A stretch of DNA of 64,000 bases, taken from contig CBFFRP010000298.1 of NCBI GenBank assembly GCA_965644295.1, positions 625,505 to 689,504 on the forward strand, written 5' to 3'. Numbering within the stretch: position 1 is the stretch's first letter; the number at the start of each line of letters is the position of its first letter. Below the pieces are notes generated by a model. That model was not told where the DNA came from, did not search any database, and saw nothing but the letters and a program-made list of their open reading frames with translations. Made by a program: the position numbers and the translations under genes. Positions 1-25,811 of this stretch are shown here, in pieces. This DNA is from Paraphysomonas bandaiensis. Lineage: Eukaryota; Protista; Chrysophyceae.

Positions 1-857
1 TCAGAGACTCTCGACTGGCGCAAACCCTTCACTCGACTCACGTGACTAGTAGCAGACTTGCGGCTAGTTCCAGTGGATAAAAAAGTAGACTTTTCTCTAT
101 TCGCTCCTCTTTTTGGCTTTTCCTCCTTCGGCTTCTCTGCAAAGGGGTCTTTCCAGTCCTTCGGGCGAGTGTATGTGACCTGACGCATAAACTTTTGCCC
201 CGCAAGCTGGACATACACGATTAAGCAGCAATGATACTCATATTAATAAGATTACCTGTCGCTTATAATCTTCTTCCCACTCCTTCACATGATAGTAAGC
301 GCCAGTTTTACGAACACGTTCAAAGAATTGTTTATTTCTTTGCTCCCTCAGTTTTTTGTTGAAAGAGTCATCATTGTTAAGTGTTGTTATCAGCTTCTTC
401 ATGTTTTGGTAGTCTTTATCAGTTATTCTTGGTGGGGCAGTCAATATACTGCTTATTCGTTGGAGTAAAACTCTGCACACGAATTATGCTATTTCTATAC
501 ACGCTGTTGCACAACGTACTTGTTTTGCCTCTCAATAGCATTGTTGCGTTCCGTTTTCTTGCTCTTTTTACGTGGGTTATTGGCTATTCTTTTACTGGCA
601 AGTGATTCTGGTACGGTATTATCAAGTGTCGGAGAGCTACCAGGCTAAAAAATAATGAGCTAACATAAGAGAACACATAATTCCTAGACCTCTCTATGCA
701 TTATTTTCTTCAGTCGAGCTAAATGACAATTGCGTTTATTCGTCAACTGAAACATACCATTAACAGACTCATCAATGTCATTATAACAGAATCGCACCGC
801 TTTCTCACGAAGAAATTTATTGCTAACAAGATCGTAACCACAGCGTCCTCTGTCCAT
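1..857 (-). CDS. CFAP97/KIAA1430-domain (hemingway-like) ciliary protein, multi-exon, 3' end runs off the window
   Basis: ATG at 857. Splicing four short GT-AG introns gives ...RLKKIM...TLDNTVP...RKKSKKTERNNAIERQNKVLLQRISSI...WEEDY, matching the recalled DN..P / IER.N..LL.RI pattern of the family. Confidence 0.7.
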
Positions 858-3570: not shown

Positions 3571-6500
3571 ATGAATAATAGATTAAGATCTGAAGATAGC
3601 AGACGAAGGAGTATTTCACCTACAGAAGAGAGTGGTGTGTTTGTATTGCTTTTAATGGGCTCTTCTGATGCTGTTGTGTTGTAGGAACTCCATCTGTGTG
3701 GAATGTAATGTACAATGCCGTATTCTCCAGTGAAGAGGCTACTGACATGGAAAGCGAGTATGGTTATACACTCTCAACACATTTGTCCAGTGTATTTGAG
3801 CGTCATAATTCCGAGGCAATCGCACATGTAATGGATACCCTTCGCAAAGTAGCGAATAATGTAAGAAATTCAACGTTCGAACGACGGCAAGGCATCAGTC
3901 ACTTGCGTGCATGCATACGTGTGCTCAGTAGCTTTTTAGAAAAGCATGCTTCCCCGTATGATTTCCTGCTGTTCTTGAATGCTGTCTTTATTTTGAACGG
4001 AACTGCAATGGATTTTTTAAAGAAATCGGACATGAGGGAATACTATACTTTCGTGGATAGTGTGTGTTCTCTAACGGATCAAGCTTTCGTAAATCCGTTT
4101 CGTGACCCGAATACACATGAGGAAGATGACCGTGAGTACAATGGTAGTGTGGATGTATACAACCTTGTTGTTGGTATGAAGGATTATATCCCCTTGAAAA
4201 AGCTCGTCCATGATATTTCACGTTTCATCTCAGACATGGTTGAGAGTAGTTATGGTAGAGCATCGTGCAGGGATATCATATGGCAATGTTTCCTACTAAT
4301 TCTGATGGTGAAAATGCATATCGGTCCTCGTTCACCATACAATACTAGTGACTTCGTCATTAGTAGCGTAGTATTCGTCACCAATAAGATGCTTCCTATT
4401 TTGAGAAAATGTATGAGTGATTCTCTTGCTACTGCAGAGAACATAGGAATCAGCTGGCTACACTGCTGTGGTGACCTTTTGGCGATTAGATGTCTTCTTC
4501 TACCGATTGAGGTTGTTTGCAGCGTTGCGGTTTATGTCAGCGATACTCCAGCTTCCCTGCTAATGTTGCCCAAAGTTGCAGTGTTCGGTGTCAGAGCAAT
4601 GGAGGAAGTGAACAACCGTGGGAAAATTGAATTGATGCGAAATAGAGAGATGAATGTGCGGGATTGGGTTAAAAAGGTTGATACCCATCTAGCACACTGG
4701 ATATTCACAGTAATATCCCGCGCGCCACCTGAATACCAAGACAGTGTAGTGGAAAAATGGAAAATTGCGTTGTTGAAATGGACGAATGCCATGGATTCTA
4801 TGAGACGGAAGCCATACACTGGGAAGAATAGCCCTAAGACTTTGAAATTCTGGGAGTCTCTGTTGGAAAGGTTTGCAGTAATGGTTGAGGGAGATCGCGT
4901 GGGTACCGTAGTGGCAAGTGTACTGTGCTTGGCCGCCCCTGATTACTTTAAAGAATATATCCGCACTCAAGTCGCATCACTTGTTTCCAAGGAAAAAGTT
5001 AAGCTGAACTTTAACTTGCTCATGCAGTGTGGTATTACGCCATATGCTCTGACTAATCACAGGGTCGTGGAGCATCTCATCATCCGTGGTGTGAACTCAT
5101 TTTCACGGCAAGGCACATCTAGCAGTGACCTTGTTACCAAATATGCCCCAATGCTTGCCTTTCTAGATAGCACTGTCTACGAAATGAGAGAGCTTGCAGA
5201 GGAGGATCAGGCGAAGTGTGTACGCCATGTGTTGAAATATCTTGCGGTAACCATCGACGCAATGGCATCTGCACTGAGCCGACAATATCACTCAAGCCAC
5301 CGTTTTTCCATAACTCCCCAGGATTATACACTTCTTTATCTACTCATTCCATTTAAGCTCGCGGAGTTTGGGACTGTAGTTGATGTTTTCATTGATTCGG
5401 AAAAGGTGGACTTGGAGACAATTCGTCGAGCTCTTGCGTCGAGTGTGCACAAATTTGCAGCTGCATTGCTAGGAGAACTCCACCTTGATGGCGGGCGCCG
5501 TGCCCGACTGAGAGAGGAAGAGATGATGTGGCTTGCTGTTACAGATGGGGCTAAAGTGAAACGAAATCACCTGTACGGTGAAATGTCTGATATTCTGAGT
5601 TCTGCATGCATGGAATATATTTTGTCGAGCCATCGACAGCGAGCCCTCATGTGTAATTTGCGCACCATCGACACTCTTGGATTTGTCATAGGAAAGGCTA
5701 CGCGCTATTTACCAGTAAACTGTGATCAATGTTCAAGTGAAGAAGTTGTTTATATTCCACTCTTTTCCATAATGATGGCGTCCTATATGCTGTCGAATTT
5801 GCACGACGCGCTTACCGACAATGTTTTTGATTGGCCAGATAATACTCAAAATCTATTTTTCTTTTGTGACCACATTGTAGGAGGCGCTTGTGATGCATGG
5901 AATGTGGGCCCCTTGGATGAGAACAACGTTATATCTCAATTTTATCAAACTTATTTTCCAACCAATAGAAAAATCGACAATTTACTGGTGGATGTTAAAT
6001 CTATTACATGTGATATCATAATTCGACTGAATGAACCTGTCAACAATCATAGTCTCTCGCTTGCGCAATTGCGAAAGCTGGACTCACACCTTGACGAAAC
6101 GACAGCGTCGTGGGCTTATTGTAAGCTGGAAATGGTATTTGATCCACAGCTCTGCAATTTGCATGAAAAAATACTACTTCTCGAGAGTTTTTGCTCTCGG
6201 TTAAATCAATTGTACAGTGTGTTAAGTTGGCTTTCATCACTTGGTCTCTCAAAGAATATGAATCTGGTTCAAATTCCGACCGCTGATGATCTGGAAAATG
6301 AGCCTTGCGTCAATGTGGTCAGAAGAATGAAAGAAATAGCGAACATGTTAGGAACTGAAATACACCCTCCACTCTATGAGCTGGATAATGTGTTGACGCA
6401 ACTCTGTTACTTCATAAGCAGTGGTTCTAACTTGTATAGTCATCATTTTTCTGAGTATATTGCACAGCATGCTAGTGGAGGCGTGCTTCCTTTTGGTCAG

Positions 6501-9500
6501 AGAATGGGAAATTTGCTGCATGATGCTAACACAATGGCGATTGCAGCTCTTCGACGATTGTTGGAAACAGATGACATATCGTTGAGCGACTTTGCTGAGG
6601 GAGGCGTGGATGGATTTATGCAAGGACTGTGTGGTAGATCGAAAGAAGATGTTCTCAAGGAGCTGAAGATAATAACGGACTTCATGGAACCGAATACCGC
6701 TCAGAACATTGAAATTGACGATGTGCAGAGTAAAATGCTGCGCGTGAAGCATGCAGTGAAGCTTTTACGCATTCAAAGTGTTCTTGGAAAAGCTTTAGAC
6801 GCCTGTATGAGCCCTGAAATCGGCCTCATTAAAAATGTCACAGCACTGGGGTCTTCTACGTCTGATTTGTGTGATCTAGATTGTATTAGGCGTGATTTAG
6901 AAACTCCTGGCGCAATAAAACTTTCACAAGTGTCTCATATTTTGGTTAGGTTACAGCGGTTGTTAAATGGACTAGAGGTTTCACATTTACAATTGCTTGC
7001 TGAGTTGGCGAACTGTCATCAGCTGTTGGTGTTTCTTCAATCTGAGAAAGATTTCGAGGGGCAATTGCAACTCCACACGCAAGACATGCAGGGTACAGAT
7101 ATCGGAGAGAAAGTTTTAACAGACTTAGACATAGCACACAGATTTTTGAAGTCTTTGCAATTAACTGAGGCAAGAGGTGCTGGTCCAGGATTTACTCTGT
7201 CGAACTTGACAAGTTTACTAATTTCGGCCGTACCGTCAGAAGCAGATGCCCTTGAGAAACTTGCCGCGGTAACATCTGCTTCCGAACATATGGCTGAGAT
7301 ATCGTTGTGGTTTAGCGGGGGATCTGCAATATTTAATCTACAAAAGCTTCTCTCTATGGTTAGAAAGTACCTTACTGATGGAACATTTATCTCAATACTT
7401 TCTGATGATATCAATATGTCGTCGTTACAACTGCGTGTTAGGCGAACCGACACACGCACGGAAAATGTAAAATCAGAAGTTCTTGTCGAGTTAGTTCGAG
7501 GAGTTGTGCTCAGTAGGGGAGAGGCATCAAGTGACGAGGATCGACAAGTACTTGACTCCTTTTTAAGAGCCTATGATCATGCCCAAAGAACTCACAATTT
7601 ACTCATTCGTGCTAGACTTAATAGCGTACCACACTTTTATAATGTCAGCGTTTATGAAATCTCGCTTTCCACGGATTCTAAGGCCCATTCACAGGTAGAG
7701 TTGGAGATCAGCCAGTGGTATGAAGAATACACAGCGATGTTGAATTCTTGTAAACGCCTTCACTTTCTGTCTAGAAAGCAGATAATGACTTGTCTCCATC
7801 GACTGTTGTGTGACGGTAACACCACTAACCTCTCCGGTTACGTCCGAATGTGCTTTCCAGATATCGACGGGCAAGTACCTTCTATATTTGAACAGCTTGT
7901 CAGCATGCTTAAATCTGACAGCAAACATACATTTATTGGTAATCACGCTGAAGCTCTCCGAGAATGCCTGCGAATTTTCTGTGAAACTTTGAACAACTGT
8001 AACCAGATGTTATTGGAATATGGACTCATCATGGAAACAGAAAGTTACATTCCTACGAATAGTGGTGTAGATATCACGCAACCTATGCCAGTGGTTATTA
8101 AATCTTGTTCACGTTTGCCCCATGTGATTTATACTGAGCTTATTGAACGATATGAAGGCGCTCCGCTACCGTCGCAAGTATTGTGGTGCACACACAATAC
8201 CACTGCGGACGAACTGCGAGATTTCGTGTCTAGAGCTAGTGCCTGGCCGTCCATACGTTTTGCATTTATGAATGTTAACATGTTGCGTGCCATCTCAAGG
8301 GATGTCTTATTAGAAGCATGTCTCGATACGAATGCGGGCCTAGCACTTCATCCTAAAGTATTTCTTTTCTTTTCAGGAGATAATGGTCTCGATGCTTTCT
8401 CCGTTCTTCGGAACGAGTGTGTAGACGACAGTGATGTACAATCAACGTATTTGCGAAATGTTGATACTGCTTCAGGAATGAGCCAGCTGTTTCCTCAAGT
8501 TAACATCATTTCAGGAGGACCGTGTGTTGGAAAGTCTACGTATATACGAGATCAGCTCAAAAGTATTTTGGCGAATGAAGAGAATTCGAAGAGTTTAACT
8601 GTTAGTGTTCATGAGAACTTTCTCTTGAGCTCCTTAACACAGCAGTACACAGAGGAATGTGCATCTGCTACTGCTGTTGGTTTACACATTAACGTCTTCG
8701 CCCATTCCGTCTATCGCGCTGTTGATAAGATCGATTTACAGGAAGAAGAAAAAGAGTTAATATCCCATCTACATCGATCAACTCAGTTTTTACACGCCCT
8801 TATACACTGTGGACTTATTGTGGACGATCTATCGGGCACCGTTGTTCAACTGAATGCGGTATCAAAGCACTACTTTTTTCTTGAACTACCTTCAGTTTTA
8901 TATTGTGACGGGACATCGATTCGCACATGTCCAGCGCACAACACGCCATGTGAATCACATATATATGCTTCTCATTTATCTCCAGCCGTGCATGCAAAAA
9001 CATTGCACGTTGAAGTGAACAGCAAGAGTGTTCCGTTTAAAATATCTGAAGCTGCACGACTTGTCGCGTATTATGTAGACAAAGCAACAAACCATAGTCG
9101 TATCGATGAATATCCAACAGAAGCAATAGTGACACCTGATGTATTTTCTGATGCTGATGCGCGAAATGCACTCGAGGTAATTTGGAATAACGAACTGTTC
9201 GTCGAGGAACCTAACTATCGTACAAAAGATAAATTCATTCGCCTAATGATAATCAGAATTCGCTTTTTGATCGATTATGTTCCGTTTTTTAGATACGAAA
9301 GTCAGGAATCTCGTTGTTCAGACGCCATAAATAAGGCGGAGACACTAGCGCAGGACTGTATGAAGGTGTTCCTACAAGAAGTGATATCAGTGTGCAGTCA
9401 GTTGTCTGGGGATTGGTCAAAAGCTCCTTGTGCTTTTACGGTGAGGTATAATTCTGGAAGCAGATATCTATTAACATGTTTATGTGGAGACAATTACTTA

Positions 9501-12500
9501 CGCAAAATTCCACAAAATATGGTCGATACAGTTATGTATATTGATAACGCATGTGATAATCCTGCACTATGGGGAGAGTTGAGAAGGGAGGTCGCATTCG
9601 CATACCAAATGGCAGACACTAATCGTGCTCTCGAACTTTTACAAGCGCAAAATTATATTCTCACCCCTGATTTTGCTGTGAAATTGCTCGTACTAAAGGA
9701 TCTTCATGACGCAGGCTCCACTGTAGTTTTGCAAGGAAGTACAGGAACTGGAAAGACGGAACAAATACAAATGCTTTCTCTTTTACTGAATAACGGTAGC
9801 GATCTAACACCGATGATGACCCAAGAAATGTATTCTCTTCTCTCAGAACTTGTCGACTGCAATATTCTATCTCCAACGAATGAAAACCAAGCATTATTAT
9901 TTGAAAATAATGGTGAATTACGAAAAAACCAGAAAAATGCTTTTGATGTAAGTTCTTTTTATGTATTTATGCAAATGAATGATGTACTCTAATAGGCATT
10001 TTTGCTATATCTTGAGGATGCATCTGGCAATTTCATTGATGCAGCTGGTCCAGTAGTTGCGAACTACTTCCTGAAGTTTTACAAGAAATACAAGTATCTA
10101 CGGAAAACTGGTCTTGTCAAAAGTGTATTGCGTGCTTTTGAAGGGACTGGTGATAACTCAGAAGAAAATAGCCTTGAAGCAGTTCCTGATGTTTTTGATA
10201 TTGCTGATGCGATGACAGCAACTGACACATCTGAATCGGCGGTTTCTGGACGTAGCGTGTTCAAATCGTGTGGCGAAATGTTGTCATTCTTACGTGAAAT
10301 TTCGAGTGAACTGGAAGATATTTTTTTTGTTATTCGCATGCATGAAGGAATAACAGCGAACCACTGGCGACAAAAGGTGTCTCGCATAGAGTGTGCAGCT
10401 CTTCGTATGCCAGATATCAATATTGTGGCCTTTGTTGATGAATTGAATACATCTGTCATTATGGGAATGGTAAAGGAAGTAATGATCGATGGAACCATGG
10501 ATGGTCGCGTCTTGCCATCAAATATATTTTGGGTAGGTGCAACCAACCCTGTTTCATCCCACGATACACTTTCAAAGGGCAACGTGCCTAGTTTAGATTT
10601 GACTTTGTCTAATGTGGGAATTGATGACGATGATGATATCAATGAGTATATTGTAAGATCTCTTCTACCTTCATTTGAATGTACTGTGCTTGGTGTGGGC
10701 AGCCTCGCTGTGGAGCAGGAGAAGAATTTTCTTGCGGCATACTTGTTTGACAAAAACCTTGGGTTTGCATCCGCTATAGGGCAAGACCGGAATATACTTC
10801 CGTATACATGGTTTTCGTTTATGAGGAATTTTATATTAGCATCGCAAGAATTTGTTCGTAAATGCGGTATGCACAGAACTAAAGTCAGTATTCGCGACTT
10901 AATGCGAACATTGCAGCTGTATCAGGTTTTCAAATTATATTTTATTTAACTCTTTCTAAACTATGTATTACAGTTTTTCTTGAATCCTCGAATTTCAGAT
11001 TTCTTCATTCCACGAACGAATGCGACTTCTATAAATCCTTCAATCACAGATTTCACGTGCGTGTGCTGGTGTTCGCTTTGCCTTTCTGTCGCTACAGTGT
11101 ACTATTTGCGTCTCAGTAGTGGCCGGTCTAGAAATGGCATCGGTGTCAGCACTGAGAGTGGAAATGACTTGCGCTCTCTCTTTGTCGCGAATCTTTTTCA
11201 GGTAATATACGAGTATGATGAAATAAGCCAGTTGAACGAACAGCTTCCGTTTTTGGGGGTATTTGAAAGCTCCTTGCTGCATGTCTTTCAGTCCACTTCT
11301 ATTCCAGCTGGAATAGCGCCTACACGTGCCCTTCAAGAGAATGTGTTTGCATGTGTTACTTGCTTTTCGGCCTGCTTACCTGTAATAATAACTGGACCTC
11401 CAGGGTGAGTGACATATCTAAGAGTGAGTGACATTGTGACATATAGTTATCGTGTATATAGGTGTGGCAAGACTTTAGCAATGCAAATTGTGTTAGATAA
11501 TATGAAAGGTGCGTCATCTCCCAACAGTAATTTTCAGCGATTAAAGAATGCGAACCGATTTACGTATCAATGTTCTGAAGGCAGTGCTGCGAGTGAAATA
11601 AAAGCTGTGTACGAGAATGCTCTTCAGCGACATTCCCGGTTCACTCGTGCAAGGATTTATTCTGAACGGTGTGTGGTGTGTTTAGATGAAGCATCTCTTC
11701 CACGTAAGCGTCGAGCTGCTCTGAAGGTCACACACTATTACTTAGACAGGTCTCGTGATTCCGACCGTCCAGTAGTATCAACTATTATGTTGACCAATAG
11801 GACACTAGATGCAGCGAAAACAAATCGTGCTGTACAACTATTACAGTCGATGCTATCTTCCGATGACCTGTATGCTTTGGTGAAAGGTTGTTTAATGACC
11901 GGTGGAAGAATCCCGCATACTCAACAGACTATGATAAGAGGGTTATGTAATGCTTTCCAAACAATCGAACAGCTTTATGATATTGAAGGGAGAAAAAATG
12001 TATTTCAACTAAGGGATTTTATCTTCTTTTTGCGATACTTAAGACGAGGTATATTATCAAAAGCATCACGTGGAGATGGCGCAGCACGATTAGCAATTTC
12101 AAGCAATACTTTCGTTCTGAGTGCGATGGATATAGTGGCGTCACTTCGTCGAAATTTCAATGGCATGCAGCCATCTCAATTCGAAAATATAGTGAAACAC
12201 TTTTTGAGACACACTGGTCATGATCAAGTTGTCAGCGACCCGAAGCTATCTCAATCTGGAATGTTCGAGCCTAAAGTATTAGAGACTTTGAGAGAATCTT
12301 TGGATGACAGTATTGAGGACGGTGAAAATCCGAATCACTCTGCATTTAGACATATAATGATAATTGATAAGACTGACACCGAATGTGGGATTTCCCTTCT
12401 TTTTGATATGAAGTTTCTTAACCCAGACACGACTGACATTTGTCATTTAGCTGATTTCTCTGATGACACACATGACCGACAGAAAAGTGAACTTGCGGCT

Positions 12501-15500
12501 CGCATAAAATATTCAATTGAGCAAGGACGCACTGTAATATTGTCGAATGCACAGAGTATTTACTCTGCATTCTACGACCTTTTCAACAAGCACTATTCTT
12601 CAGTTCGTGTGGGCTCGCAAAATCCTGATGGTACTGTCGGATCCCGGCAGTACTATGCAAACATCGGTATTGGCTCGCTTTCAAGACCTTGTATTGTACA
12701 TCCCAAGGCCAGAGTCATCGTTCACGTGACGCGATCAGAGTTTGCTAAGATACAGCTTCCATTCCTTAACAGATTTGAAAAATACTCAATTTCTTTGAAA
12801 GATGTTGTATCTGAAAAGCTTTGTATGCTCTCGCGAAAGAGCACTCTAGTACCATCAAAGCTTAAACTTAAAGCTGAATTGTTTAAATTTGTAATGGATG
12901 GAGTGCGTCACTTTGTTAGTTTTTTAGGAGAAGGTGCCTTCTATGGCGTAGTAGCTGACGAAACTATAGCAGCGCTTATTCTTCGGAGTATCAATGACAG
13001 TGTAGCAGCTGAAAGTGATGTGCCTTTATTTCAATCTGCTAGACATGTCAGCGCGAATAGCAGTTCTAATACTCTACATTATTCATCTGCGAGTATTTTA
13101 CCGGATGATGGCGAGGGAGAAGCTATGCATATTGGAGATGAGGGTGACTTGTTGCCTTCCGAACTTCCTTTCGGCAGTGTTGAGGAGGATGTAGATGATC
13201 GATATGACATTGAAGCATCAAGAAATTCTCTTGGTTTGTCCTCAGACCCGTTTTGCAATATCGACAAGTATATCCGGACTGTTAATTTCCAGTTACTGCA
13301 GGTATTTGATTGTGTTTTGTTTATTTCGTGATTAATATAGTTTTTCTCCTGTGTAAGCTTGTGCGACCAGAGGTATGTTGATTTAGTAGCTTTGACAACT
13401 CGAAATTTATAAGTTATATTTTCTAGGTATTATTCGCTAGGCGTAAAGAACTCCCGAGGGCATACCTGGAAGAAGCGCTTCAAAGGCAGGAGCACTTTTC
13501 TGCGGTTAACCTAATTCGCGGGTTGTCACTGTCGCACTGGCAGAATTCTCCAAATGTGTTCCCATCATCTGACACCAACGTATGTACAAAATGGACCATA
13601 TTTACCCGGACAAGCAGTGAGTTGTTGCAGCTGCCATCATCGTTTGACAGTCAGAAGCAACTCCTCCCTGTTTTAATTCGAAATGAGTTAGAAAACCAGG
13701 ACAGAAAGGTTGCCAAGAAAATGGTTCACGTTGTGTCACTGTCTCAGTTTCATCGCAGCATGGATTTTGAAGATGATATGAATGAATTTTTTACTAATGA
13801 TTCCCAAAACCTAAAGCACCGACGTCTATTAGTTCTGATAGCTGATAGGGGAGTCATATCTTCTTCTCAAGTTTCGTTTGTGATGAGGGCTGTGGGGTCT
13901 TGCACAGACAGGCTTGCTGCTGAGTCTCGTCCACTTGTAGTTATTATTCAACACTTCAGTGTTGAGCGAACACACCTCAAATCTGTGTATGATGCGCTAC
14001 CATTTGCTGGTTGGGATATGTATTATGTAGACTCCTTCGGATACTCAGAAGATATATTTATCTCAACCAGAACTCCTGGTGCTAAGGCCACCAGAACTGT
14101 TGGCAAGGAAAATAACTGGGCTGAAGAGGAGAAGCAAGGAATGTCTGCATCGCGGTGCACAGGACCAGTGTGTACATCGTTATCTCATTCTGATATGGCT
14201 GACATTCGATCCTGGATGCTAGTTGCATATGGGCTAAAAGACACACCGTCTAAGAATGACGCTATTATCGAGTTTTCGAAGTCCGCTTTGTCAGAGATCA
14301 AATACATTGGCTCGAATATGTACGGTGTCCGTAGATTAAAAAAACAATTGCAGGATATGGGTATTTCGAGATCATTGCCGGTATATCTTCTGTCTCGAAA
14401 TAGCGGTGGTGGAGAGTGGTTGCATTCTTTTTTCAGTTCGCGCACATACTTACTGCATGAAGTACTGTCGCATGTAACATCTGCGTGGGGTTCAGTTCTG
14501 CACAGAGCTGTCAGTTTTTCAGTTTCTTGCTTGAGTGAAGGTCGGTCATCTCTTGGTATGATGGATCACACACGTGTGGCGCTCGCGAATTTTTTAAAGG
14601 GATTTGTTAGATATGTTGTAGTTCAGCTTGCTAATGATTATGGTCTGGAATCTCTTGCGGGCCTTCCTGTAGATTCCGAAGGTGGTCAACTTGATGCGAG
14701 TCCTGTTGTGAAGTTTGTCATATTAATGATAAGAAGTATGCATCCTCCCTCAGAAGAATCTCTGAAACGCTATGCTAACTCTAATGTAGTGACGATATCT
14801 CTTGATTCTTCGTTTGTTTGCGAGACGCCGTTGTTTCATTTTGTTGATCAAGCTCTGTCTACTATCAAGAATGAAATTGTGATGAAAGAAACATCCGCTG
14901 GCTTGGGGAGTGATAATTCCCTCCACAAAAAGCTTGAGTTGGAAGTACAGTCGCACACCCAACTCGATGAAGCTATCCGGGTGTTGTCATCAACGCCGAT
15001 GCTGCATTCAAGATTCATTCGTGATTACATTCGTGCGGCATTACCCCACATTTTACTCACTGATGAGGAAATGGATGTTCTTGAAAAGGTGCTTTTGCTG
15101 CAGGAGAATGTGTCGCTTTTGATGCTGTATGCGGAGCCGAAAGAGGAGCATATTCTTGTGGATATACTGGCCGTAATCTCACCGTTGAAGTCACTAAGTA
15201 CTATTCCGAATAGCAGGTGGAACGTGGGAAGTGTTCTTCAGTTTTTGGATGGACAGAGTGTGGCTGGTCCGGGCAACAGAGATTCTGACAAAGGCATAGT
15301 TTATGATCTGGAGTCATTTGTTTCTAATTTAACTTGGGATGCATTGCTGGATATTGTCGTTTCAGATAGTTGTGAAAGCACATTAGAATGTCTTAAGTGC
15401 TGGGTTATAGCTGCAAGAGACTTAGGGAGTTTCAGCAGTTCGCACATGCAAAACACCGAGTTACTCCGTTTTTTATTGATGCAATTCATTCACACGATAG

Positions 15501-18500
15501 TATCACAGTACTCAGGCGAAGGCGATATATACCAAGCCCTGGTGAAATCTATTCGCGCACATCTCCGTGATATCGAAGCTGATGAATCATTCTCTGTTTT
15601 GAAAGTAACGATGTCACTTCTACATGACACTGTGAAGACAATACATGTGACAGATCAACAGCGCGCTGATGTATATCGCTCTGTTTCGTCGGTAATATTT
15701 GATTCTATTTTTCGAAACCACTCTGGATATACTGATACTGATCTGAGAATATTCGTGAGTGCTTTGCTTCGAGTGGGATATGATTCTTACCACGAAGCCG
15801 TCAAAGTTTCGGTATCTTATATCCACAGTGCGATGATTACCAGTTTGCTTTATGCTCTATTGGCTGATGATTCCTTGCGATTTTGTGGAGTTGTAGATTC
15901 ATTGATGACAAGACCACTCCCCTTGTATCATGGCCTGGTAGTGTTGTCGCCAATTCGAGACGCTGTACAATCTCTGCCTTCAACACTTCCAGTAGACTGT
16001 ATTCCTGATCTACAGAAGTTTCCTGAAACAGTTGTGTCATTTCCGGAGCAGGGTTTTGTAGACGCTTTGTTTTCAGCTATGGTAAAGAAGTATAAACAAG
16101 ATGTATCAAGTCGCACGTTTTCTGTTCAATTGACAGATATGTATGGAATATACACCAGACTCAGTAAAGTTGAAAGCTCAGCGTCAAAAATTGGAATGAC
16201 TGCATCTGCTGTTGGTTTGGTAACGTACATCGCTTCGTCACTCTCACGCGATAGAGATTTGATTGCTCCGGTCGCGGCATTTAGCGGTACACTGCAGAGT
16301 TTATTTTCTGCACATCCGGTATTGATTCCTTTATTTGTGGCATCTTTTGGTACAGATGCTTCAATGATGCAATTCTTAGGAGACCAAGAGAGTGTTATAT
16401 CGATGGGACTGCCTGAGGCTTGGTTCATGGCACAAGAAATGTCTGCAGAAGAGTTGTTTAGATGTCCGCCTTGTATGATCTCGACCAGACAACCTCTGTC
16501 GGTGGAGTACGCGGAACTGCGTCGCACGCTTCATCGATCGGACTTAAGCGCCGAAATGCTTTGTGATTGGGCTCGAGATCGCTGTGTTGATGATGAAAGG
16601 ACTCTTAACTATCGAATGATGCTTACACTCGCATCATACCACGAAACATTTTCTCCTATTTGTAATGGAAATGAACGGGGAATCCTCATTTCGAGAGTGA
16701 TCTTGGAGTGCTTAGAGATGAGACAGTTTCAGGAATCCTTATCATTGACCGGCGATGAACAATCTATTTTGCGATGCATCGCTCAAGGTCCCCACGATAT
16801 TTTGTGCAGCACTCACGACGGATTAATGTTCTATTTTTCGCGAGGAGAATGCCAGGATAAAGTCAGTGCGATGCACCGTACAGCAGCAGTGAATACTATG
16901 GCGATGATTTTAGGCTCCAGAAGAAATGCGTGCTACTATTACAACTGCTGTTTTCATACTGAAGACATGCACTCGAGTCAAGGGCTTGGATCCGGTTGGG
17001 GACGAATATCCAAGGACTGTGGCTATCAAACTACGTTCAGGAAAGGTGTTTTGAGTTTCGATGATCATGCACCGAACCCTGCAGGGGCCAAATTTGGAGA
17101 AATAGTCAGCATGCGCGCTATCAATAATTACTTCATCTGGATAGCCTTTGCATGGGGAGCATGGGTCCGCATGGACCGATCTCCTCGCCTCACAGATGCG
17201 TACACTTGGACGACAACATATCCCGATGATTATGCACCTGGGTGTCCAGATGTAACTGACAAACAGAGGATACTTGGAACAATATACGCTAGAGCTTACA
17301 GCTTCTTATCGATTTTGCAAAGTGATCCTAGACTTAATCGAATTGGCGTGGATTTTGAACTTTATATTTCACTGTGTTCTTATCACACTGCCCTCAAACT
17401 CTCCACCTGTACTGACCAATATGGATACTTTAGCAACTCTAATCTCGAAGATGCAACGAATAGGCAGAAAAAGTGCATGAAATACCTGTCACGTATCTGG
17501 AACGATGCGGAAAAGAGCGTACCTGGTGTGAGAAAGGAATATCTTCAGAACAATGTTGCTAAAGTAGAATCTATCATTGCATTCAAGAGAGGATGGTCAA
17601 ATGCAGTTGATGGCATAACATCTTTACCGGACAAAGCAGCCATTGATGCTAAACTTGTTCTTGAGGTGCCTTCTGATGGGGAAGACCTGCACAATATACA
17701 AAATCGATGCCGTCTTTTTATTGCGTCAGTACTGGGCAAACTGGATAGACTGAATCTGAATTTACACTTGCCGATAATTGTACACTTCTATAAGTGGGTT
17801 CACAAGAACTTGTCGTATCGAGTGTGTACTACGGAGCAGTATATTCCTATTAACACTGCGATTGACAAAATCGACGATGCTGAACTCAGGAGATACGGAC
17901 ACACACTTTTTAACAATTTTTTGGTATCATGGAATTACTTAGTTCAGACAATGGGTGAATTAAATGGTGTGTGCCCTACTGCAGCTGCAGCTGGGGAAGC
18001 TGAACTGCCCCCTCTGCAGCATGACTCTTTGCTGTGCCGCATCTTGAGTACTGGTGAACCGGACGCAGAAGATGTCATCATGCGATTGATGAAGAATCAG
18101 ATAGGACCACAAAATGAATTATTAGATTTGGACGAAGCTAAAGAACTGTTAAGCACGTCGTCACCGTGCTCTATCAATCCGAACTGTACTTTGGTTAGCA
18201 CAAAGGCAGGGAAGTTTCACTTATTGACATTACCTCCATCTTCTTCAACCCAGAAGTGTCCATTCTTGGCTGGTGTTGAAGATGTGAATGTGTTGTATAA
18301 CCAGATTGCTAGTGTAGCAACACGACCGCTAGGATACAGAGAAAGCAGTGGTAATGAAACTTCTGGATTTTGTTTTGATTATCGAGCTGCGGCAGTGTTT
18401 TTAATTAGATTATTAATATCCGGGAAGCCTAGTCTAGTGTTGCACCCAAGACCCGCTTACTTCACCTTTATTCCTGATGTACAAGACCGCGCGTCTCAAC

Positions 18501-20513
18501 CCATTGACTCTAACTCAATTGAGACTTGTGGATTATTTGACCCCGTGTGTCGTGTATTACAACTAACGAGGGACCTCAGAAAAGAGTTTAAATTTCATGA
18601 GCACAAGATCTCCAGTAGTGTTGAAATTACAGCTCTTTTGCGACAAATTCGAGATGAGAGTACGTCGTTTCAATATGTTAGTATGGTGTCAACTATATGC
18701 GAGGAAATTATTGCTAGCTTACATATGGGCGCAAATGAAGAGGACGGTGCTCATAGGCGGAGGGATATATGTCTCAATATGCCTGTGCGGTCTCTACTGA
18801 GCTCAAGTCTTCCTGGTGGTACGATTCGTGCTGTAGCGCAGCTTTCTGTTCGTTCGACGATTTTGTTTGCTGAATCAGTGTGTCGTGTGCACACGAATAG
18901 AGAATACATGTTTAGTTCCATGCAGCATAAACACATGATGGCTCCCCTGAGTCCGAATGTGGAGTCTGTACTCCGGAATAATATGGATAATCTATTGTCC
19001 GTAAGTTTAGGCACTGCACTAAATGGTGTTTTGCAGAAAGTACAAGAGCTAATTGAACTGCTCACATCAGCTTCAACTCGACATACGCTACTTGAAAATC
19101 AGCAACATGTACTTCTTAATAGCATTCCTGAATTGAGAAACATTTTGACAGGTAATTCTGGTATCGCTGATAGCGTTCAGTACGAATGGGCGATTTTTAT
19201 ATCAGAAGTTGAAACTGTAAGAGTAGAAAATGTGGTAGCTTTTCTTCGTATTCTTTCAGAATTTTGTTCGAAAGCAACTGCCAAACTAACGTCCAAACCT
19301 CAAGCTTCTGGTGACGCGACCGACGTGATTTACGCGGAATTGGTACGATACTCTATGTACAGCTATCAACCTCTTAATCTATGTTTCGTAGGTACCGGAG
19401 GATATGCAGGTCTTCCAATCTCTTGGGGCAGATGATATAGTGGAGAATGAAGCTCACTCGAAAGTCGAAGCACACAGTGCCCTTCATCTTCCTCCGGCGG
19501 TGCTGCATGATGACATTGTGGAGAATGAAGCCCAGTCGAAAGTCGAAGAAGCACATAGTGCCCTTCATCTTCCTCCGGCGGAGCTGCATGATGACATAGT
19601 GGAGAGTGAAGCCCAGTCGAAAATCGAAGAAGCACATAGTGCCCTTCATCTTCCTCCGGCGGTGTTGCCATGTTCTCCACCTCTGAGTGCGGCAGAGGAG
19701 AGAAAAGAATCTCCATTTTCGTCACATATGACTTCTGTAATTACTCTGGGCAAAATGTGGGGCTCTCCAGTCGCTGATTTGCTAGAGCTGTCAGATAGAA
19801 TACCTCATATTTTCAATTTTTATGATGACGGTGAGAATTATTTCGTTAAAACTGAAGATATCTCATCCGTACTGAATAAAATAATGACCAAGTTAGTATC
19901 CATATCAACATTCGATAAGTCGTTGGAAGGTATTGAAACTGGCGTTATCGTTTCAGTGCTCCGAGCACATGACGTTCCAGTGTTTTCTATCATGCGTGAA
20001 CTGTACATACTCGTGTCTGATAGCGCTGTGGCAATGGACATACTTGGTGGCGATGCTGATGTATCCGATGGGTTTCCAATTGAAACACCAGAATTGGGGA
20101 CTCAGACGAGTGTCGAAATAGAACAGGGATTCAGAAATGGGGATAGCCCCTGCGAAAAGAAGACGTTGACTGATACCTCTGCATGTTGGAATATTTCCGT
20201 TGATAGTTTGATTTACCTGGCTAAATGTGGCATACTCAAGGTTAGCCCCCCTCCTGGCGCCATTGTAGGCCAAACTCCAGTGGATGTGTCGTGGACTGTT
20301 GAGGCGAAAGATATGTCTGAATTCAACGATGTTGTGAGTGCGAAACTTATAGACCTGAGCCACCTTCAAAATGTGTTTGACAAAGTCAACGTTGTTGATA
20401 TCGTCCGAAAGTGTGGGATATACGTCATTGAATGGGGTATGTACTGTTACATTACGCTAGACAACCAGGATAGGGCCACACAAGCCTGTATTGACGCTCA
20501 TATGACATTATAA
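3571..20513 (+). CDS. RNF213/mysterin-like giant AAA+ ATPase (putative E3 ligase), ~5526 aa, 8 exons
   Basis: Exons 3571-3634, 3685-9947, 9996-10925, 10974-11404, 11462-13301, 13358-13372, 13427-19342, 19392-20513 are all GT-AG and in phase (exon 1 is the least certain). Motifs colinear with RNF213: LPSQVLWCTHNTT, GGPCVGKSTY, YILTPDFAVKLL..GSTGTGKT, FVDELNT, GATNP, VSIRDL, ALQENVF..GPPGCGKT, YQCS, CLDEASL, NRTLDAAKTNRA, FQLRDF, RRNFNG, FYDLFNKHY, PFLNRFEKY, QEHFS, and C-terminal LHLPIIVHF..FNNFLVSWN. Confidence 0.9.
19430..19666 (+). repeat. Coding minisatellite, 3 x ~78-81 bp (26-27 aa, DDIVENEAQSKVEEAHSALHLPPAxLH), in the last exon of the RNF213-like gene
   Basis: Three near-identical tandem units are visible in both DNA and protein. 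Confidence 0.95.
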
Positions 20514-21042
20514 AGTGTAGAAAACATATATTACGAATTACTAAGACAAATATGACATGTCATCCTGTAATAAATGGGATTTACTTGAACATAGTACTTT
20601 TTCTAATAATATTCTCTTGTGGAGTATAGTCTATACTAGTTAATAGTCAAGCATAAATCGTGTTTTTACTGCTAATAATAGACTCTTCAGTATAAGAAAG
20701 TAACAAATGTATGGAAATTTAATAAATATAGAGAGGCGAGCACAAAATAAGAGGAATGAGAGGCCAGACTTGTAAATACGTTTAATACAGATTTAATATC
20801 ACTCCTTACTCAAAACCATTGTGGCACCCGCATGAAAAAGAGTTGCAGTGGGATAGACGGAAACAAACATTCAGAATAATTTCTCAAGGAAAGGGAAAAC
20901 AAGTTGCCTGCAGGATTTTATAAAAGCGACAGGAATTGTTTATGGTTCCTTTGCTCTGGGTCTGGTCGCCAACAGAGTCCACATTACTTGTCAATGATTG
21001 GCGGCAAGCAGGTTCGGAATTATTATATTGGTCTGGTATTGA

Positions 21043-21400
21043 GCCTCAACAAAAACGAACTCGCACCTTTATGTGTTGTTCTGGAGGATAAGTACTAGAG
21101 AGATTTCTTTAGGAAACTAACGTAAGCAGCATATGTATAGTCAGCAGAAAACGTTCTTCCCATAGTGTCACTTGTGTATACAAATAAACAGGCATCCGGG
21201 AATGGGCCCATCTATATCAACAGTCTGTTTGCTTACTGCTTTCTCTTCGAGTGCTATAGAGCAAACGTGGTTGCAGCTTTGTGCTTGTGGTGATGCACAA
21301 GAAGCTTTTGTAGCGTTATCAGAGTTAAGTACTAGTTGTAGTTATAAATTGCAATGTTAAATTAGTACTGACTCTTAAACGACTATTTCTAATGATAAAA
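21043..21400 (+). repeat. Interspersed repeat family R, copy A
   Basis: Starts CCTCAACAAA..; contains GGCATCCGGGAATGGGCCC, the core GTGGTTGCA..GTGCTTG-N10-CAAG..GTAGCGTTA and the tail TTAAACGACTATTTCTAAT. Confidence 0.8.
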
Positions 21401-21619
21401 AGTTGATATTTCTGATAGGGGACACTTTATAAGCTTGCAATGTGCTCATTGGGGTTTTCCTCGAAACCAGTTTGCTTACTTACTAGCAATTAAATTTCGC
21501 TTTACAATATCATCGTGCAGAAGTATATATTGAGTATCTGATTATAACTTTTGAGCTAGTCGTAACTAGGATTTTAACGTATAACTGATTGGTGTAAAAC
21601 TTCTTTATCTACTAGTTGA

Positions 21620-21786
21620 AGTATAGTAGTGAATGTCTTATTATTAGAAATAGGCGTTTAAGAGTCAGAACTATAAGTTAACATTGCAATTTATATCTAA
21701 AACTAGTACTTAACTCTGATAACCTGCTATTTGGCGCTACGAAAGCTTCTTGTGCATCACCGCAAGCACAAAGCAGCAACCACTTT
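21620..21786 (-). repeat. Interspersed repeat family R, copy B (core and tail, inverted relative to A)
   Basis: Reverse complement of the core (CTTGTGCATCACCGCAAGCAC..CAACCAC) and of the tail (GAATGTCTTATTATTAGAAATAGGCGTTTAA). Confidence 0.85.
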
Positions 21787-21806
21787 TGTCAAGAGGTATG
21801 ATGGTT

Positions 21807-22119
21807 AATCAGGGGGGCGCCCTTGGGGTAGGGGTCCGCGAAGCTTAAGGGAGGGTCATAGTTATGTAGATGTATGTCGACATAATGTAGATGAGAGCTG
21901 AAGTATATTCTTCTCCCTGACGTATTGATCAATGATTCCTCATGTATTAGTTTCGAACAGCTAGGCCCAACTCGCAGCTGAAGCCATTCAAAGACACGAC
22001 GGCGCCCCAATCCACTCCCTCGCCCATGTATCTCAGACTAGGTACACTCGACTCACTAATTCAGTATCCTCCTCCACAGGGTCCTGAGGAGCCGTACCCC
22101 AAGGGGCGCCCCCCTGACT
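21807..22119. repeat. GC-rich inverted repeat / MITE-like element (~310 bp)
   Basis: ATCAGGGGGGCGCCCTTGGGGTA (21807-21829) pairs with TACCCCAAGGGGCGCCCCCCTGA (22096-22118). Confidence 0.75.
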
Positions 22120-22211
22120 GATCTTTCTGTATTTTAATGTTAGGGTTAGTCTTCTTCTGTACCTTAAGGACTAACGTACGCAGAGAGCTTCTCCCTCACA
22201 CACATGAACGG

Positions 22212-22372
22212 AAGTGGTTGCACCTTGGTGCTTGAGGCGACGCACAAGCAGCTTCTGTAGCGTTACACAGTAGGATATGAGAATTTGTGCTAGGTTGTTA
22301 CAGATGGTGTTCTTCATCTAACTACTTTTCTTGTTGGTTCTTGATGCCTACTACTAATAATATGACTTTAAT
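22212..22372 (+). repeat. Interspersed repeat family R, copy C (core and tail)
   Basis: AAGTGGTTGCACCTTGGTGCTTGAGGCGACGCACAAGCAGCTTCTGTAGCGTTA..AGTAGGA. Confidence 0.85.
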
Positions 22373-23017
22373 ACGAGCATCTTATTACTCCTTTTTTGAG
22401 TTTTTCTTAGTCCAGCTCCCAGTCTGAGCTTCCATTCGCTACCATATCCGCAACTGACATTAGGGTGTTAAAAGCCTAAATAACTTCACATTGAACTCAC
22501 TCTAAAATCAGTTACTTGTGATCAACATTTCTTATTATTCGTTGTTATTCACTAAATTAATATCTCTTCTACCTTCTACCAATCTATATAATAGACCTAT
22601 GATAGTCACGATCGTCTGCAGTCAATATATTTCAGTCAATATAACATACTTCATATCTTATCATTAATTCATGTACTTCAGTGGTCAGCTACTGTGTTCT
22701 TCAACTAACGATTATAATTCGAATGCATTAAATAAAGCTTTTAATTGCGTACAAACTAGCAAACTTCAACAAAACGATCACCATTTTTTATATATATTCA
22801 AATCCTTTATTGCTTACCCACATAAAACGTAACAAATTCTCCGCCGTCAAGCAGATTTAAATAGTTTTTCTCGTCTAATATAAAATGTGTAATCAAGATT
22901 TTCCATGGTACTCGAATGAGGCAATTAAATTCACTCAACCCTAGAATACAGCGAACAACTTTTACATACTATTTCGAATACATAACAACTCTGATACTAC
23001 TAGATGCAGTAGCAGGG

Positions 23018-25740
23018 TTAATAGTCACCATTAAACTCCCTGTGAAATGTAGCTTCATCATCTAGCCAATTCAACAATTTCTTGGCCTTTAGTGCGGTGC
23101 TAGATGCCCACTCTGTGCGGTGACCGTGAACATATGTGGCGTACGTTGTCTTTCCAGTTGCTGCAAATGTATACTTAAGTATTCCGTGTGGCCGGCCATT
23201 GCTGAAATTACCCTCCAGCTTATCACCATTTACGTAAGTTGCCTCCCCTGTACACAAGTGAATATATTTCATAATCTGCACAAAAGGTAAGTGTACCTTC
23301 TCCTTCCTTTACGTCTTCCACCCACGTACCCTTGTATTGCTTGAACCTATATAGGCTTCCAACCCCGCTGATGAACATTCTCTTAGGGTCACCACTCTCT
23401 CCATCTCTTAAATAGGTTTGTGATCCTTGTCCATGTCGCTTTCCACGCCGCATCTCACCTGAATATGTTCTTCCATCCTGACACACAAATTCACCCACCC
23501 CATCGAAATATCCAATGCTGAACTGCCCCGTATAAACACAATAACCCTCGCCTTTATGACGAACGCCCATTGGACACACATACTTGACATTATTGGTGTT
23601 CCCAAATTCCTAATACACCAACCACAGTTTTAAATATAGCGCGATATATATTAACGTGTAGCTCGGGACTCATACATAGAATGCATATATCACCTCAGAG
23701 CCCATCCCATGTCTGAGACCATTCCAAAACTCCCCTCTATATTTCCCACCCTCTGTCTTCTGCAGCACGCCACTTCCATGCATATTATCGTCTTTCCATG
23801 CACCTTCGTATCTATTTCCACCTTTCCACACCCTTACACCAAGTCCGTTGCGCTTCCCATTGGGATCAGGAAAACTAATTCCAGACACGGGATTCATGCT
23901 CCTATTCACATATTCACCCTGCCACAGAGATCACCACATCAAAATACAGATTTTCACTTGAAATCACCTCATAATAACCTCCATCACTCCATATAAACTT
24001 CCCTTGGCCGTAGAAAAACCCGTGCATAAAACTTCCTTCATAGCGGTCCCCACTGGCATACCGCATTACACCTTTTCCATGCTTGTGTGCCTCAACCCAG
24101 GATCCAATGTATTGGTCACCTACACAGCCAATGAGCTCAAATACTCACATTATCACTTGCCCACCATTGGCATATGACATGACGCCATCACCGTTAATGC
24201 GGCCGTTGTAGAAGCTGCCAGTAAATCGATTGCCATTTACAAAGATCCTCACCCCTCGACCTTGAGGCTTTCCTTTGAACCACTCACCCTTATAGCTGCC
24301 CTGGTTCCGCCTCCATTTAAATTCTCCATTACCATGAAAGTATCCAGCCTTCATTCCTCCAGTATACTCATCCCCGGTGTGGTATTTCACAGAGTTATTC
24401 TCACCACTGGCCCGTCCCTTGAACCACTCTCCTTCATACACGTCTCCCGCGCTAGTCTTGAGGACGCCATGACCGTGATACAAATCATTCTCAAACATTC
24501 CAGTATATGTATCATTCTTAGCGGAAACATAAAGCCCTTTACCATGCTTCTTTCCACACTTAAAAGATCCTTCATAACGATGTCGAGCTGATCGATCGCC
24601 GTGCTCATTGACACCAGCATATATAAGCAGTCCAAAGCCCTCTGGCAAATCATTCACAAACTCCCCCACATACTTATTACCATTGCTATATCGTAGAGTA
24701 CCTCTTCCATGCTTTAACCCATCCACAAACTCACCCTTAACAGTGTTGCGTTATACAGTCACAGTCACAGTCACTGTGTATACACACACCTCATAGATAT
24801 CTTTATTGGCATATATGCGCTTTCCTTTCCTGTATACTCTTCCATCATCTGTGAGCTTTATTCCTTTACTAGGCATACTTATCAGTGCCCATTACGACAT
24901 GCACATGCACCGATCCACAGAGAGATATCGACAGTTACCACTCCATAATATAATGCACGTATGTATGTATGTATGTATGTATGTATGTATGTATGTATGT
25001 ATGTATGTATGTATGTATGTATGTATGTATGTATGTATGTATGTATGTATGTATGTATGTATGTATGTATGTATGTATGTATGTATGTATGTATGTATGT
25101 ATGTATGTATGTATGTATGTATGTATGTATGTATGTATGTATGTATGTATGTATGTATGTATGTATGTATGTATGTATGTATGTATGTATGTATGTATGT
25201 ATGTATGTATGTATGTATGTATGTATGTATGTATGTATGTATGTATGTATGTATGTATGTATGTATGTATGTATGTATGTATGTATGTATGTATGTATGT
25301 ATGTATGTATGTATGTATGTATGTATGTATGTATGTATGTATGTATGTATGTATGTGTGTATGTATGTATGTATGTATGTATGTATGTATGTATGTATGT
25401 ATGTATGTATGTATGTATGTATGTATGTATGTATGTATGTATGTATGTATGTATGTATGTATGTATGTATGTATGTATGTATGTATGTATGTATGTATGT
25501 ATGTATGTATGTATGTATGTATGTATGTATGTATGTATGTATGTACTTGTTGGCATGTACCTGTAGGTTTGTACTTGTACAGGAGGGATATCCTGACGAT
25601 GCCTTTAGTCGACTGCTATGTGTCCATACATGCCCACCTGTCTGAGTGAAGGGTGAGAATTTCAATTCCACCTCTTCAAACTATCTATCTAGATGGGCTT
25701 ATTCCTCACCTACCTCACCTGAAAGACGATATGAGTCCAT
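23018..25740 (-). CDS. MORN-repeat protein (RSPH10B/MORN-like), multi-exon
   Basis: Many YxGxF/WxxGxxxGxG repeats across ORFs 24145-24726, 23670-23909, 23223-23579 and 23018-23281, joined by GT-AG introns. The 5' exons near 25561-25740 are tentative. Confidence 0.85.
24959..25545. repeat. (ATGT)n microsatellite, ~146 units, one substitution at 25357
   Basis: Directly visible. Lies in a predicted intron of the MORN gene (minus-strand donor GTACAT at 25560). Confidence 0.99.
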
Positions 25741-25811
25741 AGACTGTTCATCTCATTATTCTCATCACTAAAGCACACTGAGGACGACAGTCACATTAAT
25801 AAACTGTTCCA

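What the first reader, a model, noticed from the sequence alone, without database searches (positions are those of the whole stretch)
16880..17170. RING-less E3 module with a zinc-free RZ-like catalytic Cys/His pair
Seen: no RING pattern and no CxxxH...CxxC RZ finger in the post-AAA half. At the position where RNF213 has its RZ finger, the protein reads YYNCCFHTEDMHSSQGLGSGWGRISKDCGYQTTFRKGVLSFDDH (Cys 17018-17020, His 17066-17068). Known: the RNF213 RZ catalytic cysteine lies in an ECG motif with a downstream His. Inference: DCG...H could be a transthiolating active site without zinc ligands, which would be a variant E3 architecture. The alignment is by eye and from memory.
Basis: inference. 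Interest (0 to 1): 0.8.

Follow-up and report, generated by a model that had tools for sequence, protein, structure and literature searches.

The report
RZ-less RNF213 relative, conserved cysteine loop
A marine protist's giant RNF213-like protein lacks both known ubiquitin-ligase fingers; where RNF213 carries its catalytic RZ finger it has a short loop with a nearly invariant cysteine, shared by relatives in distant eukaryotes, which may be a new active site but is not the proposed Cys/His pair.

Summary
The peptide and both codons are as described: Cys at 17018-17020, His at 17066-17068. They lie in a 5.9-kb exon of an intact, transcribed and spliced gene of about 5,500 residues (window 3696-20510). 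Its ATPase core matches RNF213 by sequence (E 1e-18). A confident model of 16277-18199 matches only the RNF213 E3 module (Z 21.2, next best 7.1). Neither a RING nor an RZ finger is present, although the same genome has true RZ fingers in two other RNF213-like genes.

The D-C-G loop lies between the two E3-shell helices that flank the RZ finger in RNF213. It is the most conserved 16 residues of the module. The Cys is kept in 48 of 49 relatives from stramenopiles, Chromera and Amoebozoa, all without RING or RZ, and some are fused to a USP deubiquitinase.

The proposed His partner is not conserved (3 of 28 sequences), and no His is conserved anywhere in the module. The loop shows no detectable RZ similarity, and its residue-level counterpart in RNF213 could not be fixed.

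The "RZ-like Cys/His pair" is not supported. A zinc-free cysteine site in a new RNF213 subfamily remains a reasonable, untested hypothesis. The scan noted this same stretch once before, in another window.

The parts
3696..20510 (+). Giant RNF213-like gene, about 5,500 codons; the true start is not determined
   Evidence: One reading frame is interrupted only by short GT..AG introns. Gene-model protein P0001 is identical over 12903-20510.
8514..8537 (+). Walker A motif (G-x4-G-K-S) of the ATPase core; a second one starts at 9735
   Evidence: Regex on the exon translation; weak Pfam AAA_19 match in the same place.
11466..12815 (+). ATPase-core segment with direct sequence similarity to RNF213
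   Evidence: phmmer against PDB: residues 20-469 of this piece match human and mouse RNF213 chains, E 1e-18 to 2e-14.
13427..19345 (+). Large exon that holds the finding
   Evidence: Exact mapping of P0001 onto the window; metatranscriptome contigs lie on it.
16277..18199 (+). Modelled region (641 residues) with the fold of the RNF213 E3 shell/core
   Evidence: AF2 mean pLDDT 85.8. The top 7 Foldseek hits are all RNF213. VIA Z 21.2 with 467 residues aligned to human RNF213 4258..4888, next best Z 7.1.
16982..17029 (+). Signature loop G-[LP]-G-S-x-[YF]-x(3-5)-D-C-G-[YF], the most conserved 16 residues of the module
   Evidence: Highest mean information content of any 16-residue window in alignment A3; present in 49 family proteins.
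17018..17020 (+). Near-invariant Cys of D-C-G, the candidate functional residue
   Evidence: TGT codon; Cys in 27/28 and 48/49 relatives. The one exception has Lys. DSSP places it at the start of a short helical turn, model residues 247-250.
17030..17059 (+). Predicted beta-hairpin that follows the Cys
   Evidence: DSSP strands at model residues 252-255 and 258-261, pLDDT about 79.
17066..17068 (+). The His proposed as the catalytic partner; not conserved
   Evidence: The column holds His in 3 of 28 rows, a gap in 19 and other residues in 6.
17972..17974 (+). Second conserved Cys of the module (model residue 566)
   Evidence: Cys in 24 of 24 rows that cover the column. It is also Cys in the protist RZ-type clade but Glu in human RNF213.
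19346..19394 (+). 49-nt GT..AG intron, removed in RNA
   Evidence: Contigs from three metatranscriptome runs of three studies skip these 49 bases; P0001 mapping agrees.

Best explanation
The stretch encodes the most conserved loop of the E3-shell domain of an RNF213-family giant ATPase. The protein belongs to an old subfamily that has neither the RING nor the RZ finger. A compact 47-residue element (loop, D-C-G turn, beta-hairpin) fills the inter-helix site where RNF213 carries its flexible, zinc-bound RZ finger. Shown here: family membership by ATPase sequence and E3 fold, absence of RING and RZ, location of the loop, near-invariance of the Cys, non-conservation of the His, and expression. 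Inferred: the D-C-G cysteine sits at the start of a short helix next to an invariant Asp and is the ubiquitin-accepting nucleophile of a zinc-free transthiolating site. It would act without a fixed His base and would not be a degenerate RZ finger. The confidence given refers to this inferred step; the shown parts I hold at about 0.9.
For: - ATPase core matches RNF213, E 1e-18.
- Model of 16277-18199 has pLDDT 85.8 and matches only RNF213 E3 modules: Foldseek E 1e-5 with the next hit at 0.2; VIA Z 21.2 against 7.1 for the next.
- No RING or RZ in this gene, none in 64 family proteins for RZ, and none in 23 long ones for RING.
- The loop is the top-conserved window of the module, and the Cys is kept in 48/49 proteins spanning stramenopiles, Chromera, Endostelium, Mastigamoeba and Mastigella.
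- The one exception carries Lys in an otherwise conserved protein, which argues against a tightly buried structural Cys.
- Relatives fused to a USP deubiquitinase plus a SAM domain tie the module to ubiquitin.
- RNF213 itself works by transthiolation through a Cys at this site of the scaffold and does not need its RING (PMC12075652, PMC11549300, PMC7311170).
- The gene is transcribed and spliced.
Against: - No activity data exist for any member of this subfamily.
- No His, or any other obvious base apart from the adjacent Asp, is conserved.
- Invariant Asp and Gly around the Cys also fit a purely structural helix cap and tight turn.
- The tools return no model coordinates, so exposure of the Cys was not measured.
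- The E2-docking C-terminal domain of RNF213 was not modelled or recognised here.
- The same genome keeps two RZ-bearing paralogs, so this protein need not be a ligase at all.
Confidence: 0.4

Rival explanations
1. The D-C-G loop is only structural: a conserved cap and turn that closes the E3 shell where other family members insert the RZ finger. This subfamily is then either not a ligase, or uses another site or a partner enzyme.
For: Invariant Asp and Gly flanking the Cys are typical helix-cap and turn residues. The loop is short and modelled as packed, with pLDDT 71-87. No conserved His or second catalytic residue lies nearby. RZ-bearing paralogs in the same genome could supply the ligase activity. 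Some relatives carry their own USP domain.
Against: A structural role does not easily explain why this is the most conserved window of the whole module across three eukaryotic supergroups. It also does not explain why Lys is tolerated at the Cys position in an otherwise conserved member.
Confidence: 0.35
2. The loop is a degenerate RZ finger. D-C-G...H would be the direct descendant of the RZ E-C-G...H dyad after loss of the four zinc ligands.
For: Same insertion site in the scaffold. The local motif x-C-G resembles E-C-G in human RNF213 and D-[LR]-C-G in the protist RZ fingers. A His lies 16 residues downstream in this species.
Against: The His is present in only 3 of 28 relatives. The Pfam RZ model finds nothing at E 10 here but finds two true RZ fingers in this genome. 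The element has 47 residues against about 115 in RZ-type proteins. Profile-profile alignment of the loop region is not significant and pairs the Cys with a zinc-knuckle Cys rather than the nucleophile. By spacing from the upstream helix, the G-x-G-S motif lines up with the L-P-T-M motif that precedes the RZ finger.
Confidence: 0.1
3. The Cys serves another chemistry, for example a redox or regulatory switch, a lipid or other modification site, or a nucleophile for a non-ubiquitin reaction. D-C-G-[aromatic] recalls, from my memory, the catalytic motif of Ulp/SENP proteases.
For: A near-invariant Cys at a helix start; a second conserved Cys at model residue 566.
Against: No Pfam protease family matches. 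The fold matches only the RNF213 E3 module. No conserved His is available for a protease triad.
Confidence: 0.1
4. There is no real feature: a pseudogene or a chance motif.
For: In-frame stops at 9990, 10947 and 11406 and frame changes along the gene.
Against: Every interruption sits in a short GT..AG intron. One intron is seen spliced out in three RNA studies. The region is strongly conserved across supergroups.
Confidence: 0.02

Closest known systems
RNF213 (mysterin) of vertebrates: a giant dynein-like AAA ATPase with an E3 module that transfers ubiquitin through the RZ finger Cys
   Same: Giant size, RNF213-like ATPase core by sequence, and an E3 shell/core fold that is otherwise unique to RNF213. 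A functional-looking Cys-bearing element sits between the same two shell helices.
   Different: No RING and no RZ finger, hence no zinc ligands. A compact 47-residue loop-hairpin replaces a flexible RZ domain with linkers of about 115 residues. No conserved His. The signature G-x-G-S...D-C-G-[YF] was not found by Pfam, and I found no paper describing it. The C-terminal region is longer.
RZ-type zinc finger (Pfam PF20173; RNF213 and ZNFX1)
   Same: A Cys followed by Gly in a loop, at the same place in the scaffold.
   Different: None of the four zinc ligands is present, the catalytic His is not conserved, and the Pfam model gives no hit. True RZ fingers exist elsewhere in this genome.
RZ-bearing RNF213-like paralogs of the same genome (contigs C219 and C186) and their protist relatives P0065-P0076
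   Same: Homologous E3 module (hmmsearch E 6e-9; hhalign probability 96.5%); same organism.
   Different: They keep a canonical RZ finger and match human RNF213 directly by sequence. The window's gene does not.
Zinc-free Cys-dependent E3 ligases (HECT type), named only as a functional analogy
   Same: A catalytic Cys that needs neither zinc nor a strictly conserved His would work this way.
   Different: The fold is unrelated; there is no HECT match in Pfam or in the fold search.

Membership tests
RNF213 family (giant AAA-E3 proteins) | Dynein-like multi-AAA core with sequence similarity to RNF213 | tested here: met
   phmmer of 11409-13328 hits nine RNF213 chains, E 1e-18 to 2e-14; two Walker A motifs.
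RNF213 family (giant AAA-E3 proteins) | E3 shell/core scaffold fold after the AAA core | tested here: met
   Top 7 Foldseek hits are all RNF213; VIA Z 21.2 with 467 residues aligned to human 4258..4888.
RNF213 family (giant AAA-E3 proteins) | RING domain inserted in the E3-back domain | tested here: not met
   No Pfam RING hit and no RING pattern in any exon or in 23 long relatives.
RNF213 family (giant AAA-E3 proteins) | RZ finger carrying the catalytic Cys/His dyad | tested here: not met
   No pattern and no PF20173 hit at E 10. Positive control: PF20173 finds two loci in the same genome.
RNF213 family (giant AAA-E3 proteins) | E2-docking C-terminal domain | not tested
RNF213 family (giant AAA-E3 proteins) | Ubiquitin transthiolation activity | not testable with these tools
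   Needs a biochemical assay.
RZ-type zinc finger (PF20173) | Four zinc ligands C-x3-H ... C-x2-C | tested here: not met
   Absent from the loop and from all 64 family proteins.
RZ-type zinc finger (PF20173) | Conserved His base about 21 residues after the nucleophile | tested here: not met
   His in 3 of 28 rows; no His-rich column in the module.
RZ-type zinc finger (PF20173) | Nucleophilic Cys in an x-C-G loop, homologous to C4516 | tested here: inconclusive
   The Cys is conserved, but its alignment to the RZ Cys is not significant and the RZ-type model was too poor to map.
D-C-G subfamily of RNF213-like proteins (proposed here) | Signature G-[LP]-G-S-x-[YF]-x(3-5)-D-C-G-[YF] in the E3 shell, with RING and RZ absent | tested here: met
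Ulp/SENP (C48) cysteine proteases, considered from memory of their D-C-G motif | Protease fold with a His-Asp-Cys triad | tested here: not met
   No Pfam hit; the fold matches only RNF213; no conserved His.

The most novel reading that the evidence does not exclude
The D-C-G cysteine is the ubiquitin-accepting nucleophile of a previously unrecognised zinc-free transthiolation site. This site would define an ancient, pan-eukaryotic RING-less and RZ-less branch of the RNF213 family. It could represent the state of the scaffold before the RZ finger was inserted, or a replacement for it, and might work together with the second conserved Cys (window 17972-17974) as a relay.
Probability: 0.3. Interest if true: 0.85.

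Novelty: new variant of a known kind. Interest (0 to 1): 0.6.

Why it matters
RNF213 is so far the only known example of its E3 scaffold, and its activity is assigned to the zinc-bound RZ finger. This work points to a whole subfamily in stramenopiles, alveolates and amoebozoans that keeps the motor and the scaffold but has neither RING nor RZ. It carries instead a nearly invariant cysteine loop at the RZ site.

If that Cys accepts ubiquitin, it would be a new zinc-free way to build a transthiolating E3. It would also bear on how the RZ finger arose, and it would extend RNF213-type ATP-gated ubiquitylation, possibly cell-autonomous defence, to unicellular eukaryotes. If the Cys is only structural, the subfamily still shows that the RNF213 scaffold has a function independent of both known ligase elements. 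Either outcome can be tested with standard probes and point mutants.

Tried and rejected
- Direct phmmer of the post-AAA exon and of a 3-sequence and a 28-sequence profile against PDB found no RNF213. Homology of this half rests on fold and on the chain through the RZ-type paralog.
- Pfam gives no domain for the post-AAA half. At E 10 the loop gives only a weak, meaningless Tat match.
- The ESM Atlas fold search gave only TM 0.25 or less, so it was uninformative.
- I tried to fix the residue-level counterpart of the Cys. hhalign on sub-alignments was not significant. phmmer of the post-RZ part of the paralog did not reach RNF213. The AF2 model of RZ-type P0071 was too poor to use (mean pLDDT 54, linker below 50).
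- A search of the genome with the A3 profile finds only the window's own gene, so there is a single D-C-G-type copy.
- A literature search for "RNF213-like" and for protist homologs found no description of this subfamily. The held library is incomplete, so this is not proof of novelty.
- The pseudogene reading was rejected.
- I did not run complex prediction. The E2-docking domain lies outside the modelled region and I make no binding claim.

Full report
**The observation.** The region lies in the reading frame 13523-19435, whose translation contains the quoted peptide. Codon 17018-17020 is TGT (Cys) and codon 17066-17068 is CAT (His). A Cys with a His 16 residues downstream is not remarkable in itself. 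The exon has 42 Cys and 56 His in 1973 residues, so by my arithmetic about 15 Cys should have a His 10-25 residues downstream by chance. No RING pattern, no C-x3-H...C-x2-C pattern and no zinc-finger Pfam family is found in any exon of the gene.

**The gene.** Window 3696-20510 (+) is one gene of about 5,500 codons.
- A gene-model protein from a public source (P0001, 100% identical) maps exactly to 12903-13301, 13427-19345 and 19395-20510, with GT..AG introns between these pieces.
- The in-frame stops at 9990, 10947 and 11406 also lie in short GT..AG introns.
- Contigs from three marine metatranscriptome runs of three studies skip the 49-nt intron 19346-19394. Contigs from two of them (X5, X9) cover 16580-17273 without a single difference, and X15, from a fourth study, matches as far as 17006.
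- The gene is therefore intact, transcribed and spliced.
- Earlier notes of this scan call the organism a marine protist or stramenopile. I did not test that.

**Family.** The piece 11409-13328 matches human and mouse RNF213 chains directly, with E 1e-18 to 2e-14 over about 450 residues of the AAA core. The post-AAA half has no Pfam domain. It has no sequence match in PDB, either alone or as a profile.

An exhaustive HMMER search with 15500-19099 found 59 relatives. I aligned 28 of them (A3) and used the alignment to model 16277-18199. The model has mean pLDDT 85.8 and pTM 0.70. Its seven best Foldseek matches in PDB are all RNF213 (E 1e-5 to 7e-4), and the next match has E 0.2. VIA-align gives Z 21.2 with 467 aligned residues, model 1..609 on human RNF213 4258..4888, and the next chain has Z 7.1. 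According to its discoverers the RNF213 E3 shell/core fold has no other counterpart in PDB (PMC7311170). This is therefore good evidence that the module is a true RNF213-type E3 scaffold.

**Where the loop sits.** In human RNF213 the RZ finger uses C4505, H4509, C4525 and C4528 for zinc, C4516 as nucleophile and H4537 as base (PMC11549300; the mouse equivalents are in PMC12075652).

The same genome has true RZ fingers at two other loci (PF20173 above its cut-off). Both lie in RNF213-like paralogs.
- The C219 paralog matches human RNF213 directly. Its exon ending in the first half of the RZ finger aligns to human 4444-4517, including the C-P-N-x-H and x-C-G motifs (E 2e-6).
- Its next exon aligns to human 4669-4900 (E 2.5e-5).
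- The A3 profile of the window's family matches that paralog (E 6e-9; hhalign probability 96.5%) over the block that contains the L-H-L-P...F-Y-K-W helix.

The two families are thus collinear. The helix before the loop (model 195-212) and the helix after it (model 277-298) correspond to the helices that flank the RZ finger with its linkers. The D-C-G element (loop 234-246, helical turn 247-250, hairpin 252-261) has 47 residues between these helices, whereas RZ-type proteins have about 115. The statement "at the position where RNF213 has its RZ finger" therefore holds at the level of the insertion site.

**What is conserved.**
- The 16-residue window covering G-L-G-S...D-C-G-Y-Q is the most conserved of the whole 641-residue module.
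- D and G are invariant. C is present in 27 of 28 aligned rows and in 48 of 49 family proteins that cover the site. The one exception has Lys.
- Named members come from Chromera velia, Endostelium zonatum, Mastigamoeba balamuthi and Mastigella eilhardi, so the family spans at least three supergroups.
- None of the 64 family proteins has an RZ pattern. None of the 23 long ones has a RING pattern, and Pfam finds no RING in four near-full-length members.
- Two members end in a USP deubiquitinase plus a SAM domain, which links the module to ubiquitin.

**What is not conserved.** The proposed His is replaced by Phe in a homolog of 46% identity. It is His in only 3 of 28 rows, and most rows have a gap there. 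No column of the module has His in half of the sequences. The Pfam RZ model gives nothing on the loop, or on the same loop of two distant relatives, even at E 10. A conserved Cys/His dyad, and an RZ-like nature of the loop, are therefore not supported.

**Residue-level equivalence is unresolved.** By spacing from the upstream helix, the G-[LP]-G-S motif lines up with the L-P-T-M motif that precedes the RZ finger in human RNF213 and in the paralogs. By identity it resembles a V-G-[TS]-x-Y-Y-Q-x-T motif that follows the RZ finger in the protist RZ-type clade. hhalign on the sub-alignments is not significant, and it pairs the Cys with a zinc-knuckle Cys. The AF2 model of an RZ-type relative was too poor to settle this. 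Model coordinates are not returned by the tools, so I could not measure whether the thiol is exposed.

**Interpretation.** Shown: an expressed RNF213-family protein of a RING-less, RZ-less subfamily, with a near-invariant Cys in a compact loop at the RZ insertion site. Inferred: this Cys is the functional residue that accepts ubiquitin, about 0.4. The reasons are as follows.
- RNF213 needs only a Cys at this site of the scaffold and not its RING (PMC7311170, PMC12075652).
- The loop is the conservation peak of the module.
- The Cys is predicted at the start of a short helix, next to an invariant Asp.
- Lys is tolerated in one otherwise conserved member, which argues against tight burial.
- Some relatives are fused to USP domains.

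The main rival is a purely structural cap and turn (about 0.35), which invariant Asp and Gly also fit. In that case the protein may not be a ligase, since two RZ-bearing paralogs exist in the same genome. A degenerate RZ finger is unlikely (about 0.1). Some other chemistry on the Cys remains possible (about 0.1).

**Novelty.** Searches of the held literature for RNF213-like proteins of protists found no description of this subfamily or its motif, but the library is incomplete. I rate it a new variant of a known kind. The scan had noted this same stretch once before from another window (s1-445267) and the whole gene twice (s1-452854, s1-445190). None of these notes had a follow-up.

Noticed in passing
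G000:C219 about 166000-180700 (+) (loci L003, L004, L006, L008) and G000:C186 about 15000-35000 (-) (loci L002, L005, L007): Two further RNF213-like giant genes in the same genome carry canonical RZ fingers (PF20173 above cut-off). The C219 gene matches human RNF213 directly by sequence on both sides of the RZ finger. The organism therefore has both RZ-type and D-C-G-type RNF213 relatives.
   Followed up: partly
window 17972-17974: A second conserved Cys of the module (model residue 566) is present in 24 of 24 covering family rows. It is also Cys in the protist RZ-type clade but Glu in human RNF213. Its role is unknown.
   Followed up: partly
P0016 residues 3189-3851; P0019 residues 1486-1961: Family members from Endostelium and from a metagenome end in a USP-type deubiquitinase domain followed by a SAM domain. 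P0016 and P0010 also have a RanBP2/NZF-like Cys pattern, seen by regex only.
   Followed up: partly
P0048 residues 397-716: One family member (4158 aa) begins with a glycoside hydrolase family 31 domain in front of the RNF213-like body. This may be a real fusion that recalls the carbohydrate-binding domain of human RNF213, or it may be a gene-model error.
   Followed up: no
window 9990, 10947, 11406: The in-frame stops of the giant gene lie in short GT..AG introns. The intron near 11400 splits a G-P-P-G Walker A-type motif.
   Followed up: partly
window 19471-19572: In two metatranscriptome runs a 102-nt contig with 5 differences lies here at higher depth than the matching contigs. It could be an allele, a paralog or a repeat.
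   Followed up: no
window 34231-35757 (+), 53696-55006 (-), 56590-57900 (+): Ordinary neighbouring genes: a cyclic-nucleotide-binding domain with a protein kinase, an S-adenosylmethionine decarboxylase, and an adaptin N-terminal region protein.
   Followed up: no
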